A stretch of 63,799 bases of DNA, filler included, from Octopus bimaculoides (lineage: Eukaryota): assembly GCF_001194135.2 (NCBI RefSeq). It is 12 parts of 12 records of this genome, joined end to end, with 100 filler letters (N's around TTAATTAATTAA, not from the genome) between each part and the next. Parts side by side here need not be neighbours in the genome. Positions count along the whole stretch, not along the records: positions 15,419 to 36,456 come from NC_069010.1; 11 more parts are not named here. One strand, written 5' to 3'. Each line of letters begins with the position of its first letter. The first letter of the stretch is position 1. Made by a program: the position numbers and the translations under genes. This document shows, in pieces, positions 23,237 through 34,534 of the stretch. The notes below the pieces were generated by a model. That model made no database searches. It was not told the origin of the DNA and saw only the letters and a program-made list of their open reading frames with translations.

Positions 23237-23320
23237 ATGGAAGTTGATAAGAATATAGGTAAAATTTTGCGTGGTGACTTTCAATATATTCAACAGTATA
23301 TTAAACAAAATTTACATAAA
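23237..23320 (+). CDS. Mind bomb-like ankyrin-repeat protein, coding exon 1 (MEVDKNIGKILRGDFQYIQQYIKQNLHK)
   Basis: Acceptor ...ctttttctag|c at 23221, ATG at 23237, donor AAA|gtaagt; phase 0 fits the next exon. The frame is open back to the acceptor, so an upstream coding exon is not excluded. Confidence 0.75.
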
Positions 23321-23480
23321 GTAAGTTGTTCTGTTTATCGTCTTCTGAAAGTTGACTTATTTTATACAAAACATTAAATGTTCGTAACTAAACAGCTATT
23401 TGTCCATGATATTTCATTTCTTTCTTCACCTCTATCCTCTAATCCTCATTATCATTAGATTTTGTGAAACTTCAACCAAA

Positions 23481-23690
23481 TAGGCGCAGGAGTGGCTGTG
23501 TGGTAAGTAGCTTGCTTACCAACCACATGGTTCCGGGTTCAGTCCCACTGCGTGGCACCTTGGGCAAGTGTCTTCTACTATAGCCTCGGGCCGACCAAAG
23601 CCTTGTGAGTGGATTTGGTAGACGGAAACTGAAAGAAGCCCCCATCTTGTCCAACTCATGCTAGCATGGAAAGCGGACGTTAAACGATGT
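23481..23690 (+). mobile_element. Chimera: SINE A 5' half fused to RTE-X-like 3' tail
   Basis: SINE A to 23641, then catcttgtccaactcatgctagcatggaaagcggacgttaaacgatg. Confidence 0.75.
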
Positions 23691-24399
23691 GTGTGTGTNN
23701 NNNNNNNNNNNNNNNNNNNNNNNNNNNNNNNNNNNNNNNNNNNNNNNNNNNNNNNNNNNNNNNNNNNNNNNNNNNNNNNNNNNNNNNNNNNNNNNNNNNN
23801 NNNNNNNNNNNNNNNNNNNNNNNNNNNNNNNNNNNNNNNNNNNNNNNNNNNNNNNNNNNNNNNNNNNNNNNNNNNNNNNNNNNNNNNNNNNNNNNNNNNN
23901 NNNNNNNNNNNNNNNNNNNNNNNNNNNNNNNNNNNNNNNNNNNNNNNNNNNNNNNNNNNNNNNNNNNNNNNNNNNNNNNNNNNNNNNNNNNNNNNNNNNN
24001 NNNNNNNNNNNNNNNNNNNNNNNNNNNNNNNNNNNNNNNNNNNNNNNNNNNNNNNNNNNNNNNNNNNNNNNNNNNNNNNNNNNNNNNNNNNNNNNNNNNN
24101 NNNNNNNNNNNNNNNNNNNNNNNNNNNNNNNNNNNNNNNNNNNNNNNNNNNNNNNNNNATATATATATATGAAGGCTCTTTCAACCCATGCCAGCATGGG
24201 AAGCAGAACTAAAAAGATGATATGTTTGTGTGTGTGTGCATGCATTTGTCTTTCCTGCTCATCTTTCTTTTGTTTTCATATACATCTTTTCTCACCCACG
24301 TGTCGTTTTCAAACCCTTCTCCCCTCCCCCCCTGTCTCTTTCTTTCCTTCTCCCACTTTTTTTAATATATTTTACATGCCTTCACTTTCTTCATTTCAG

Positions 24400-24551
24400 A
24401 TCAACGAAACCAATTCATGGGGTCTGACATATTTGATGGTTGCTTGTCGCCTGGGCAACACAGATTTACTAAATTTCTTGGTAGATGCTGGAGCTGATTT
24501 GGATATGAGGGACAGAGATGGTAAAACTGCTTCACATTATGCTGTGTTTGC
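24400..24551 (+). CDS. Ankyrin gene exon 2 (INETNSWGLTYLMVACRLG...GKTASHYAVF)
   Basis: tttcag| ... GC|gtaagt; ankyrin consensus; phase 0 to 2. Confidence 0.92.
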
Positions 24552-24654
24552 GTAAGTTAAGAATTAAATAAATAAAATCTTCAGATCTGTTTCGTTTCTA
24601 AATTTCTTCCAATTCCAGACAGATTAAATGTCAGAAGATGCTATAGTCATGGCA

Positions 24655-24834
24655 GCGTTACAGGATGATGGCGAACCCTGCTGTACTCTTTCACCACAAC
24701 TTCCTCTCACTCTTACTTCCTGTTTCTGTTGTACCTGTAATTCATAGGGTCAGCCTTGTCACACTGAATATCCCCGAGAACTATGTTAAGGGTACACGTG
24801 TCTGTGGAGTGCTCAGCCACTTGCATGTTAATTT
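24655..24834 (+). mobile_element. SINE family B, central part
   Basis: Matches 35620-35770. Confidence 0.8.
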
Positions 24835-25734
24835 NNNNNNNNNNNNNNNNNNNNNNNNNNNNNNNNNNNNNNNNNNNNNNNNNNNNNNNNNNNNNNNNNN
24901 NNNNNNNNNNNNNNNNNNNNNNNNNNNNNNNNNNNNNNNNNNNNNNNNNNNNNNNNNNNNNNNNNNNNNNNNNNNNNNNNNNNNNNNNNNNNNNNNNNNN
25001 NNNNNNNNNNNNNNNNNNNNNNNNNNNNNNNNNNNNNNNNNNNNNNNNNNNNNNNNNNNNNNNNNNNNNNNNNNNNNNNNNNNNNNNNNNNNNNNNNNNN
25101 NNNNNNNNNNNNNNNNNNNNNNNNNNNNNNNNNNNNNNNNNNNNNNNNNNNNNNNNNNNNNNNNNNNNNNNNNNNNNNNNNNNNNNNNNNNNNNNNNNNN
25201 NNNNNNNNNNNNNNNNNNNNNNNNNNNNNNNNNNNNNNNNNNNNNNNNNNNNNNNNNNNNNNNNNNNNNNNNNNNNNNNNNNNNNNNNNNNNNNNNNNNN
25301 NNNNNNNNNNNNNNNNNNNNNNNNNNNNNNNNNNNNNNNNNNNNNNNNNNNNNNNNNNNNNNNNNNNNNNNNNNNNNNNNNNNNNNNNNNNNNNNNNNNN
25401 NNNNNNNNNNNNNNNNNNNNNNNNNNNNNNNNNNNNNNNNNNNNNNNNNNNNNNNNNNNNNNNNNNNNNNNNNNNNNNNNNNNNNNNNNNNNNNNNNNNN
25501 NNNNNNNNNNNNNNNNNNNNNNNNNNNNNNNNNNNNNNNNNNNNNNNNNNNNNNNNNNNNNNNNNNNNNNNNNNNNNNNNNNNNNNNNNNNNNNNNNNNN
25601 NNNNNNNNNNNNNNNNNNNNNNNNNNNNNNNNNNNNNNNNNNNNNNNNNNNNNNNNNNNNNNNNNNNNNNNNNNNNNNNNNNNNNNNNNNNNNNNNNNNN
25701 NNNNNNNNNNNNNNNNNNNNNNNNNNNNNNNNNN

Positions 25735-31877: not shown

Positions 31878-32482
31878 ACTAACAATTGTCCATTTCCTTC
31901 CACCCTCAAAAGCATGGTCCCTCCCCTCAAACGCAGCCATCACAGTGTGAAGGAGAGGTGACCTGTTGAAGAGAGGAGATATTATTCCCAAATAACAATG
32001 ATATTGAGAAGAGGAGAGGTTTGTGTAACCGAACAGATAACAACCTTTATAGGGCAAGTGCCATGTTAAAATACATCCGGTCCATTCTGTGAAGAATTCT
32101 GACTGAAACAGCTCTCTATCACACTTCACTGTTGTCATCCAAAGATGTTTCTTTATTAATCGTGTAAACATTATTGATATGTTTAGATATGACTGTGGTC
32201 TTGGTTTTGTTATATCTGAAGAAATTGCTGTGTTTTAGCTGGTCATTTTCAGTTCTGATATAACATACATAGTTTGTTGTCATGTTGTTGTGTTATATTT
32301 ATATATACAATACTCTCCCATAAGTATTTCTCATACTATGGTCATTTGGCTTTTTCGAGCCCCATGTATAGATATATGTTCCTTTATATTTCCGATATTT
32401 GACCTGATGCTATGATTTTGTTTATAATGTATATATTTGTGTAATACTATGATCATCCTTTTATATATTTCATCATTTGTAG

Positions 32483-32658
32483 TACTGCGCTAAGCTAGAA
32501 CTGAGCATAGAAGACAAGCTTTCTGGCTTGGTAGTTGCTGAGTATTTAGCCTATCACGGTGCCAACTTTTACCATGAAAACAAACAAAAGCAGACCCCAA
32601 TGGATCTCATTGAAAATGCAGGTTTAAAAGAGAAAATGAAAACGTTTTTCCCACCACC
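32483..32658 (+). CDS. Ankyrin gene exon 7 (YCAKLELS...AEYLAYHGANFYHENKQKQTPMDLIEN...FFPP)
   Basis: tttgtag| ... CC|gtaagt; resembles MIB1 [24 protein letters not shown] (recalled, not aligned by tool); phase 0 to 2. Confidence 0.9.
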
Positions 32659-33385
32659 GTAAGTGTTACTTGGTCACGACAAGTGATAAACCAGTGAATT
32701 TTCTATTTTGTACATAATTATGTTTATGTGTTTGTTTAGTTGTAATTCTATCAATATATTATACTGTTGCTAGTGTCTTGACCCAAAACCACATAACTAT
32801 ATTCAAACAAACAATAAACAGAAAACACGATTGTATGGGCGATCGACACCTCCCTTCCTACCTCTCTTATTTCCCAATTTCAAGTCTGTGACCACTGCGA
32901 AAATGTAGGACCAAATAATGAGGTCAAGGAATACATCTCGAAATTGTTTCTTAGAAACCAGTGGAATTTGTCTACTAACATCATTTTCTGTCCTTTCTCT
33001 GTATCAATCAGTCATCAGCGTGTAATGTTGCATAAAAAATAATCTACAAATAAACACACCAAACATACACCAACAGGATGTGTATATATATATTTATATA
33101 TATACAACTTTACTTTGTTTCATATGTAAATATATATGTGTGTGTATGTATGTATGTATGTGCATATATATATATATATAAATATAATATATATATNNNN
33201 NNNNNNNNNNNNNNNNNNNNNNNNNNNNNNNNNNNNNNNNNNNNNNNNNNNNNNNNNNNNNNNNNNNNNNNNNNNNNNNNNNNNNNNNNNNNNNNNTATT
33301 ATTGTTCTATATTTAAGAGATGAGGAATTATGTACATTATTTACATGGTTTACATTTGATGGATATTTTTCCTCATCTTGTTTGT

Positions 33386-34040
33386 TGCATATGGCATGGT
33401 GGTTAAGATCACAGGCTACTAACCCCAAGATTCCGAGTTCGATTCCAGGCATTGACCTGAATAATAACAATAATAAAAATAATAATAATGCCTGGATGCA
33501 ATACCAGGCAGTGGCTCTCATGGCTTCTGATTTTAATTGATTGCAAGTGTCATCATGTACATTGTTCTGTCTTGGTATAAAAAGATCGGCTACAGCAAAT
33601 ATTCTGCTTAACACCACAGATTTGCTTGTCAGTTGTTTGACCGTAACCGGTTGAGCATGTCCCTTGGTGGCTGATGATATGTGCATCTCTGATCACGAGC
33701 AGAAGTAGTGGGGGAGCATCATAGCCATGTGTTGAGAGGAATTCTTTGGGGTTTGAGTAATTCACCTTTGGAAACATGGGTGTTTTGTTCAACATCCTTA
33801 AACAAACCTTATTCAGGGACCTTTTGAGCGGAACGGGCTACTCGATCTGGAGAAAATTCTAACTGGGCCCCACCTGCGAGGTCATGCGCTGTTTATCTTG
33901 ATATGAGATCACCATGTCGCACACACATGGTTGTGATGCATGTGCCTGGTGTACCCTTATCAGACGGGTAGTCATGATGGGTATATTGGGCTTTGTATAT
34001 TTTACCCCAGTGTCACTTTGATGGCATGCACTGCTCTCTC
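33386..34040 (+). mobile_element. tRNA-headed repeat (family D) with long body, unclassified
   Basis: Head gcatatggcatggtggttaag...gagttcgattcc shared with the reverse copy at 44451-44530; the body occurs only once here. Confidence 0.45.
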
Positions 34041-34189
34041 TCTCACTTACAAATTATTTGAAATAAATAATTATTGTTAAGGTGCTGCCCTGGTAGATTC
34101 GTTAGCCTGCCGGGAAAAATGCTTAGTGTTATTTCCTCTTAGTGCCGTAGAGTGGGACTGGACTTGAAATCACATCATCATCATCATAA

Positions 34190-34360
34190 TCATCATCATT
34201 TAATGTCCGTTTTCCATGCTGGCATGGGTTGGACAGTTTGAGTGAAAACCAGTAAGCTGGGGAACTGCACCAGCTCCCCCATCCAATCTGGCAATGTTTC
34301 TACAGCTGGATGCCCTCTCTAGTGCCAACCACTCCAAGAGTGTAGTGGGTGCTTTTTACA
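34190..34360 (-). mobile_element. RTE-X-like 3' UTR/tail copy, diverged
   Basis: (CAT)n-tttaatgtccgttttccatgctggcatgggttggac. Confidence 0.7.
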
Positions 34361-34440
34361 TGGTTGAAAAATGATCATCTTGACCACTCAGCCGTGGCTG
34401 CACTATACTTCGTTATATTCTAACTATCTTTTCCTTGCAG

Positions 34441-34534
34441 ACAGGAAGCTGTGTCGGGAGTTGGCCAGACTGCCAATCCTGTGGATGGAACCAAAACGGA
34501 GGAAAGTTCACTACATCCATGGAATCGTCAGTAA
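34441..34534 (+). CDS. Ankyrin gene probable last coding exon (QEAVSGVGQTANPVDGTKTEESSLHPWNRQ*)
   Basis: Strong acceptor tttccttgcag|; phase 2 gives a stop at 34532-34534; donor TG|gtgagt at 34542/34543. An alternative acceptor 4 nt downstream changes the frame. Confidence 0.5.

What the first reader, a model, noticed from the sequence alone, without database searches (positions are those of the whole stretch)
23237..34534. Mind bomb-derived ankyrin-only protein: no substrate-binding N-terminus, no RING
Seen: eight phase-compatible exons (1257 nt, 418 aa) encoding nine ankyrin repeats, the ninth split by an insertion and followed by a partial tenth; after KTFFPPP comes a short low-complexity tail and a stop, with no Cys/His RING pattern in any frame of the visible downstream exons. 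Known: MIB1/MIB2 are MZM-REP-ANK-RING E3 ligases essential for Notch ligand endocytosis, and the split last repeat matches MIB. Inference: a catalytically dead paralog from a lineage-specific MIB-like expansion, acting as decoy, scaffold or dominant negative.
Basis: partly seen in the sequence, partly recalled or inferred. Interest (0 to 1): 0.7.

Follow-up and report, generated by a model that had tools for sequence, protein, structure and literature searches.

The report
Octopus MIB-like gene, RING exons unassembled
This is the ankyrin-repeat half of an octopus gene from a Mind bomb-derived ubiquitin-ligase family already annotated in other octopuses, and its apparent lack of a RING domain most likely comes from an assembly gap sitting where the RING exons belong.

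Summary
Exons 1-7 (residues 1-388) are real. They match Octopus sinensis XP_029653069 ("MIB2 isoform X1", 496 aa) end to end at 81% identity. The two loci are collinear from about 5 kb upstream of the ATG through exon 7, and dN/dS is 0.3-0.4. The AlphaFold2 model shows nine ankyrin repeats with a split ninth.

The missing MZM/REP N-terminus is genuine, but the whole octopus family lacks it (ANK, then RING1, then RING2 or a Death domain), and that family is already annotated.

"No RING" is true only of the readable bases. In O. sinensis, O. bimaculoides and every paralog examined, RING1 follows directly after ...KTFFPPP, with its exon 0.7-2.6 kb downstream. In the window, collinearity ends in a microsatellite at 33105-33196, immediately before the 100-N gap. 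The sequence after the gap is not the orthologous continuation.

Exon 8 has no homolog. It is one of six comparably strong acceptor-like sites in repeat-rich DNA.

Verdict: an ordinary new ortholog of a known ANK-RING family, read as a truncated model. A real RING loss is not excluded (about 0.15-0.2).

The parts
23237..23320 (+). Exon 1. It carries the start codon and the N-terminal capping helices (MEVDKNIGKILRGDFQYIQQYIKQNLHK).
   Evidence: The ortholog P0125 and paralogs P0004, P0007 and P0010 use the same start. Window 22677-23480 aligns to O. sinensis L004 9486-10246 at 85%.
24400..24551 (+). Exon 2, ANK repeat 1 and the start of repeat 2.
   Evidence: AG/GT sites in phase. 87% nt identity to L004 13264-13413.
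26772..26919 (+). Exon 3, ANK repeats 2-3.
   Evidence: 94% nt identity to the O. sinensis exon.
27733..28088 (+). Exon 4, ANK repeats 4-7.
30980..31016 (+). Exon 5, second helix of ANK repeat 7 (QHYDVVALMLSQ).
   Evidence: The peptide is identical in O. bimaculoides. Window 30858-31160, which holds the exon, is collinear with L004 21177-21489 (exon at L004 21299-21334).
31499..31708 (+). Exon 6, ANK repeat 8 and the first half of the split repeat 9.
   Evidence: The donor GATGAG|GTATGT is the one that gives the conserved junction ...LDE|YCAKL.
32483..32658 (+). Exon 7: inserted helix, second half of repeat 9 and the C-cap. It ends in ...KTFFPPP with a strong phase-2 donor (CC|GTAAGT).
   Evidence: 93% nt identity to L004 27212-27660. 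Aligns to MIB1 ANK chain residues 340-377.
33105..33296 (.). A (TA/TG)n microsatellite ending the contig, then a 100-N gap. This is the assembly break at the expected position of the RING1 exon.
   Evidence: Collinearity with O. bimaculoides ends at window 33104 = L001 15927. L001 has a short microsatellite there and its RING1 exon lies 344 bp further on.
33297..33383 (-). The first bases after the gap. They match O. bimaculoides sequence that lies 1.6 kb downstream of the stop codon, in the opposite orientation.
   Evidence: Window 33297-33383 = L001 19001-18924 at 80-84%. No counterpart in the O. sinensis locus.
34441..34534 (+). Unsupported and probably not an exon.
   Evidence: No homolog in proteins or loci. 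One of six strong acceptor-like sites in 3.8 kb. It lies between interspersed repeats at 34177-34356 and 34555-34786 and is not homologous to the RING1 exon.

Best explanation
The window holds the first seven coding exons of an octopus gene. It is the ortholog, or at least the closest relative, of O. sinensis XP_029653069 and O. bimaculoides 'MIB2'.

The gene belongs to a cephalopod expansion of short Mind bomb-derived proteins. These begin directly at the ankyrin domain, so they have no MZM/REP. They continue into one RING (RING1) and then either a second, MIB1-RING3-like RING or a Death domain.

The two RING exons are missing from the readable sequence. The contig breaks in an intronic microsatellite just upstream of where they should lie. 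What was placed after the 100-N gap is not the orthologous continuation, so it is either a misplaced or mis-oriented small contig or lineage-specific repeat-rich DNA.

Shown: the exon structure, the orthology, the ANK fold, the family architecture, and the position of the break.

Inferred: the complete protein works as a RING E3 ligase. In that reading the concave face of the nine-repeat ANK solenoid binds the substrate or partner, and the terminal RING3-like domain recruits a UbcH5-type E2, as RING3 does in MIB1. Having no MZM/REP, it would not bind Notch-ligand tails in the canonical way. Fast divergence and the Death-domain paralogs point towards signalling or innate-immunity roles.
For: Exon model.

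Orthology:
- 81% identity over residues 1-388 against residues 1-389 of P0125, with one gap.
- Nucleotide collinearity from window 17176 to 32749, introns and promoter included, at 74-93%.
- Collinearity with O. bimaculoides L001 as far as window 33104.

Constraint: dN/dS is 0.32 against O. bimaculoides and 0.39 against O. sinensis, with no stops or frameshifts.

Family architecture:
- All 13 aligned relatives enter RING1 directly after FFPP.
- Pfam gives ANK, then zf-C3HC4_3, then a second zf-C3HC4_3 or Death.
- None carries MIB_HERC2, ZZ or SH3_15 in the precomputed Pfam lists.

Link to Mind bomb. From bioRxiv 10.1101/2024.03.01.582834: MIB is MZM/REP-ANK-RINGs, its ninth ANK repeat is atypical, and only RING3 transfers ubiquitin.

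Position of the RING1 exon after the FFPPP exon: 915 bp in L001, about 700 bp in L002, 1295 bp in L004 and 2.6 kb in L003.

The RING exons and their flanks are conserved between the two reference species, yet the window has none of that sequence. The contig end in a microsatellite, followed by 100 N, is shown.
Against: The readable 3.16 kb after the gap holds no RING on either strand. It also holds no sequence orthologous to the RING-flanking introns. If the gap really is about 100 bp and the join is correct, the RING exons are absent from this locus.

I could not obtain reads, transcripts or another assembly of this species. Exon-ORF look-ups found nothing, so the content of the gap is untested.

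Orthology with O. bimaculoides L001 rather than recent paralogy is not strictly proven. A paralogous O. bimaculoides locus (L002) is also collinear, at 75-83%.
Confidence: 0.75

Rival explanations
1. Real RING loss. In this species a deletion or inversion with one breakpoint in intron 7 detached the RING exons. That would leave a transcribed ANK-only protein ending at or shortly after ...KTFFPPP. It could compete with RING-bearing paralogs for ANK-binding partners, acting as a decoy or scaffold.
For: There is no RING in six frames of the whole piece. The first 87 bases after the gap match O. bimaculoides sequence from downstream of the gene in inverted orientation, and a second, repeat-borne anchor is consistent with that. 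This is what an inversion would give.

The ANK exons remain intact and constrained. Reading through the exon 7 donor gives PPP followed directly by a stop, so a short ANK-only product is easy to make.
Against: The break coincides exactly with a contig end in a microsatellite followed by a round 100-N gap. That is the typical signature of an assembly break.

An inversion should place RING2 and RING1 on the minus strand further along, and they are not in the 3.1 kb available. The inverted match is only about 80 bp, and the second anchor is a multi-copy repeat.

Every relative examined keeps RING1. The exon 7 donor is still a perfect GTAAGT.
Confidence: 0.17
2. The gene keeps its RING exons, beyond the gap or beyond the piece's edge. 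It also uses 34441-34534 as an alternative terminal exon, producing a RING-less isoform alongside the ligase.
For: The acceptor at 34441 has a good polypyrimidine tract and the exon is phase-compatible.
Against: None of the three annotated O. sinensis isoforms is RING-less. The exon has no counterpart in either reference locus. Five other acceptor-like sites of equal strength lie in the same 3.8 kb. Its linkage to exon 7 depends on the unverified gap join.
Confidence: 0.05
3. A decaying pseudogene copy of the ANK-RING gene, unexpressed, whose 3' end has been lost.
For: The gene is absent from the protein collection, since no hit has 90% identity or more. The 3' exons are missing.
Against: There are 388 codons with no stop or frameshift. 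All splice sites are intact. dN/dS of 0.3-0.4 is well below 1, at a dS of 0.24-0.39. Absence from the collection is explained equally well if this species simply has no annotation there.
Confidence: 0.03

Closest known systems
Octopus sinensis XP_029653069 'E3 ubiquitin-protein ligase MIB2 isoform X1' (P0125, 496 aa; CM016887.1:10.76 Mb), with O. bimaculoides 'MIB2' (P0002)
   Same: The start codon, the seven ANK-coding exons, the splice phases and the repeat number are the same. Protein identity is 81% over residues 1-388. Introns and upstream region are collinear.
   Different: The reference proteins continue with RING1 and RING2 (107 aa, two exons). The window has neither in readable sequence and instead has an assembly gap.
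Canonical Mind bomb (MIB1/MIB2): MZM-REP-ANK-RING E3 ligases of Notch-ligand endocytosis
   Same: A nine-repeat ANK domain with an atypical, interrupted ninth repeat. In the relatives, the C-terminal zf-C3HC4_3 RINGs resemble MIB, with the last one most like MIB1 RING3.
   Different: No MIB_HERC2/ZZ (MZM) and no SH3_15 (REP) module, either in the window or anywhere in the octopus family. The family is less than half the length of MIB. Some members carry a Death domain, which MIB proteins lack.
Octopus ANK-RING1-Death paralogs (for example P0011, O. bimaculoides, 400 kb from P0002 on the same chromosome; P0003, P0010, P0013)
   Same: They share the N-terminal cap, the split last ANK repeat and the FFP(P/S) motif. 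Introns are collinear with the window at 75-83%.
   Different: The number of ANK repeats differs (P0010 and P0011 lack the exon 4-5 repeats). A Death domain replaces the RING3-like terminal RING.

Membership tests
Canonical Mind bomb (MIB1/MIB2) | N-terminal MZM module (MIB_HERC2 - ZZ - MIB_HERC2) | tested here: not met
   The ATG at 23237 is the conserved start of the ortholog and of most paralogs. Pfam finds nothing in + strand ORF pieces of 15419-23236. No relative has PF06701 or PF00569. Canonical MIB hits do have them.
Canonical Mind bomb (MIB1/MIB2) | REP module (Mind bomb SH3 repeats, PF18346) | tested here: not met
   Same evidence as for the MZM module.
Canonical Mind bomb (MIB1/MIB2) | Central nine-repeat ANK domain with an atypical ninth repeat | tested here: met
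   The AF2 model (pLDDT 94) shows nine repeats with the ninth split. The split repeat aligns to MIB1 ANK chain 340-377. Foldseek TM is 0.71/0.79 to 8v0e, but generic ANK proteins score similarly, so the fold alone is not specific.
Canonical Mind bomb (MIB1/MIB2) | C-terminal RING domains, the last one (RING3 type) catalytic | tested here: inconclusive
   Absent from all readable frames of the piece. The expected position falls at the 33197-33296 gap. Present in the ortholog, where the best PDB match is MIB1 RING3 at E 9.4e-11.
Octopus short MIB2-like family (ANK - RING1 - RING2 or Death) | Starts at an N-terminal helical cap (ME/D-x-x-K...) directly before the ANK repeats | tested here: met
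Octopus short MIB2-like family (ANK - RING1 - RING2 or Death) | Split last ANK repeat (NNC-H...F-SE-E...L...YLA..G.......P.D) ending in the (K/R)..(F/L)FP(P/S) motif | tested here: met
   The invariant columns of alignment A3 are all present in the window protein.
Octopus short MIB2-like family (ANK - RING1 - RING2 or Death) | RING1 (C-x2-C...C-x-H...C-x2-C...C-x2-C) encoded by the next exon after FFPP | tested here: inconclusive
   Not found in the readable sequence. That exon lies 0.7-2.6 kb downstream in four related loci. The window's contig ends before that point.
Octopus short MIB2-like family (ANK - RING1 - RING2 or Death) | Orthologous genomic position (collinear introns and flanks) | tested here: met
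   Collinear with O. sinensis L004 from window 17176 to 32749, and with O. bimaculoides L001 from 26757 to 33104.

The most novel reading that the evidence does not exclude
In this octopus species a rearrangement in intron 7, suggested by the inverted match right after the gap, has truly severed the RING exons. That would create a conserved, expressed ANK-only Mind bomb-derived protein that acts as a natural dominant negative or scaffold among its RING- and Death-bearing paralogs.
Probability: 0.15. Interest if true: 0.45.

Novelty: new member of a known kind. Interest (0 to 1): 0.15.

Why it matters
As filed, it matters little. It is another ortholog of a gene family that automatic annotation already calls MIB2 or MIB2-like in O. 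sinensis, O. bimaculoides and O. vulgaris. Its headline feature, the lack of a RING, is best explained by an assembly break.

The case is a useful caution. Domain 'loss' inferred next to an N run needs comparison with orthologous loci before it is given a biological reading.

The wider family may deserve a proper study. Octopuses carry an expansion of Mind bomb-derived proteins that have shed the Notch-ligand-binding N-terminus. The tail profile finds 30 clusters at 50% identity below E 1e-30, though that library carries no organism names. In many members a Death domain replaces the catalytic RING. I found no paper describing this in the library searched.

Tried and rejected
- Exact-product look-ups of the exon 4 and exon 6 ORFs, meant to find reads, contigs or transcripts of the same species, returned nothing. 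P0001, P0005, P0010 and P0013 were not on record either. The ortholog's locus was reached only through isoform X1.
- A second word-indexed homolog search, using the tail alone, returned only three octopus proteins and said nothing about the MIB relationship. The PDB searches and the exhaustive profile search replaced it.
- I tested whether exon 8 is a diverged RING1 exon, because a SINE-like repeat precedes both. The alignment shows no homology beyond the repeat, and the repeat is multi-copy. Rejected.
- I tested whether the post-gap contig is an inverted copy of the orthologous 3' region. There are only two anchors, one of them a multi-copy repeat, and no RING on the minus strand. Left as unresolved.
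- I tried using SINE copy identity (95-98%) to argue that the window comes from the same species as L001. Copies in O. sinensis are just as similar. Rejected.
- Foldseek against the PDB cannot separate MIB ANK from generic ANK solenoids.
- Literature searches for this family in cephalopods or molluscs found nothing relevant.
- Pfam scans given as DNA references failed because of stop codons. The upstream scan was redone with ORF pieces. The downstream region was covered by family-specific HMMs instead.

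
Full report
**What is in the sequence**

The piece (15419-36456) has 38% GC. It is rich in microsatellites and SINE-like repeats and carries ten N runs.

The exons are 23237-23320, 24400-24551, 26772-26919, 27733-28088, 30980-31016, 31499-31708, 32483-32658 and 34441-34534. Every intron is GT-AG, the phases agree, and the total is 1257 nt for 418 aa plus a stop. Pfam sees only ankyrin families.

An AlphaFold2 model of residues 1-388, built on an alignment of 14 family members, has mean pLDDT 94. 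It shows an N-terminal helix pair, eight regular repeats, a ninth repeat interrupted by an extra helix (residues 325-333), and a short C-terminal cap. The descriptive part of the finding is therefore accurate.

No N run lies inside an exon. The gaps at 23699-24158, 24835-25734, 27245-27471 and 28291-28388/28859-28910/30528-30537 lie in introns 1 to 4.

At each of those junctions the protein aligns to its ortholog with no residue missing or added. Those gaps therefore hide no coding exon.

Two of them fall inside a 75-bp tandem array in intron 4.

The gap at 33197-33296 is different and is treated below.

**Relatives**

The best hits are octopus proteins that RefSeq names MIB2 or MIB2-like. The cluster of the top hit contains O. 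sinensis XP_029653069 (P0125, 496 aa).

- Window residues 1-388 align to P0125 residues 1-389 at 81% identity with one gap. The tail, residues 389-418, matches nothing.
- At the DNA level the window is collinear with the O. sinensis locus (L004) from about 5 kb upstream of the ATG through exon 7. Identity is 74-93%, introns included.
- It is also collinear with the O. bimaculoides locus of P0002 (L001) from exon 3 to window 33104.
- dN/dS over the ANK exons is 0.39 against O. sinensis (383 codons, dS 0.24) and 0.32 against O. bimaculoides (306 codons, dS 0.39). There are no stops or frameshifts.

The gene is fast-evolving but constrained. The source species is neither of the two references.

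**N-terminus**

The ortholog and paralogs P0004, P0005, P0007, P0008, P0010, P0011 and P0013 begin with the same Met and capping helices as the window. Three others (P0014, P0015, P0019) have short N-terminal extensions with no recognised domain.

None of the octopus relatives carries MIB_HERC2, ZZ or SH3_15. ORF pieces from the + strand upstream of the ATG hit no Pfam family.

The absence of MZM/REP is therefore real. It is a property of the whole family, not of this gene alone.

**Is it Mind bomb-derived?**

Yes, by three tool results.

- The terminal RING of the relatives finds RING3 of MIB1 as its best PDB match (8v0d_B, E 9.4e-11). The IAP and XIAP RINGs come next, at about 1e-6, and align to RING1 rather than to the terminal RING.
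- The split repeat aligns to residues 340-377 of the MIB1 ANK crystal chain 8v0e.
- A profile of the tail (split repeat, RING1, RING2) was searched against 1.84 billion representative proteins. Besides 30 clusters of short relatives below E 1e-30, it retrieves proteins of about 1000 aa. Pfam shows that six of the nine checked are canonical Mind bomb, with MIB_HERC2 twice, ZZ, SH3_15, ANK and zf-C3HC4_3.

The fold search alone is not discriminating. MIB1 ANK scores TM 0.71/0.79, but ankyrin-1 and DARPins rank alongside it.

The paper behind those two structures states several relevant points (bioRxiv 10.1101/2024.03.01.582834):
- MIB is organised as MZM/REP-ANK-RINGs.
- The second RING of MIB2 corresponds to RING3 of MIB1.
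- Only RING3 transfers ubiquitin.
- The ninth ANK repeat is atypical.

**The RING question**

Every one of the 13 aligned relatives passes directly from ...(F/L)FP(P/S) into RING1, and the Cys columns are nearly invariant. Pfam confirms the order: ANK, then zf-C3HC4_3, then a second zf-C3HC4_3 or a Death domain.

The RING1 exon lies at these distances after the FFPPP exon:
- 915 bp in O. bimaculoides L001;
- about 700 bp in the paralog locus L002;
- 1295 bp in the O. sinensis ortholog locus L004;
- 2.6 kb in the paralog locus L003.

The two reference species are collinear with each other through both RING exons and their intronic flanks.

In the window none of this sequence is present. tblastn, RING1 and RING2 HMMs and a Cys/His regex find nothing in six frames of the whole piece.

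Collinearity with O. bimaculoides ends at window 33104 (L001 15927). There L001 has a short microsatellite, 344 bp before its RING1 exon. The window has an expanded (TA/TG)n tract that runs into the 100-N gap.

After the gap, the first 87 bases match O. bimaculoides sequence located 1.6 kb downstream of the stop codon, but on the opposite strand. Everything else there is interspersed repeats or has no counterpart in either reference locus.

From my own knowledge, a run of exactly 100 N is the usual placeholder for a gap of unknown size and for scaffold joins, and small contigs next to such joins are often misplaced or mis-oriented.

The simplest reading is that the RING exons lie in unassembled sequence. 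A real rearrangement cannot be excluded with the data at hand.

**Exon 8**

Exon 8 lies beyond the unverified join, between two interspersed repeats at 34177-34356 and 34555-34786.

It has no homolog in any protein hit or related locus. It is not a diverged RING1 exon.

It is one of six acceptor-like sites of similar strength in the 3.8 kb after exon 7. Any of them would eventually run into a stop.

Its TAA also overlaps a possible GT donor. It carries no weight as evidence for a RING-less end.

**Mechanism**

Most likely (0.75) the complete gene encodes an ANK-RING1-RING2 ligase like its ortholog.

- The ANK solenoid would act as the recognition module.
- The terminal RING3-like domain would act as the E2-binding catalytic unit.
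- Without MZM/REP there would be no canonical binding of Notch-ligand tails.

These functional steps are inferred from MIB1 biochemistry. They were not tested here.

Rivals are true RING loss (0.17), an alternative RING-less isoform using exon 8 (0.05), and a pseudogene (0.03).

**Novelty and verdict**

This is an ordinary new ortholog of an annotated family, seen as a truncated model. Interest is low.

The family itself is the more interesting lead and was only touched on here. It is a Mind bomb-derived expansion with no N-terminus, and in many members a Death domain replaces the catalytic RING.

Noticed in passing
Related proteins P0003, P0010, P0011, P0013, P0121; loci L002 and L003: The octopus family splits into ANK-RING1-RING2 and ANK-RING1-Death forms, and the Death domain takes the place of the MIB1-RING3-like (catalytic) RING. 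The tail profile finds 30 clusters at 50% identity below E 1e-30. I found no paper describing this expansion.
   Followed up: partly
window 28107-29060 (intron 4): A tandem array of a 75-bp unit, 95-100% identical between copies. It contains two of the assembly gaps (28291-28388 and 28859-28910), so the true copy number is unknown. The unit also occurs in O. sinensis intron 4 (L004 18571-18664 and 19176-19226).
   Followed up: partly
window 23480-23641, 26476-26660, 27529-27693 (and other copies): SINE-like copies are 95-98% identical to many copies in both the O. bimaculoides and the O. sinensis loci. Orthologous unique introns are only 77-93% identical. The element consensus seems strikingly conserved, or the element recently active, across species.
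   Followed up: no
window 33297-33383: The first 87 bases after the 100-N gap match O. bimaculoides L001 19001-18924 on the opposite strand, 1.6 kb downstream of the gene's stop codon. This points to a mis-oriented contig or a local inversion.
   Followed up: partly
L001 (O. bimaculoides CM046630.1:9418241-9445552): The RefSeq model P0002 starts inside exon 3. Exons 1 and 2 were not found within 10 kb upstream, where N runs lie at 9179-9278 and 10319-11237. That annotation is probably truncated at its N-terminus by assembly gaps as well.
   Followed up: partly
window 15829-16604, minus strand: Open frames resembling a retrotransposon reverse transcriptase. Only a weak RVT_1 hit (E 0.064), so probably a LINE remnant.
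   Followed up: partly
P0126 (3387 aa, from the profile search): A giant protein with 51 separate matches to the RING-tail profile (E 4.8e-88). It could be an array of RING-like repeats or a mis-predicted tandem gene cluster.
   Followed up: no
A stronger donor (TTG|GTGAGT) follows 8 nt later. Even if this segment were an exon, the stop might be spliced out.
   Followed up: no
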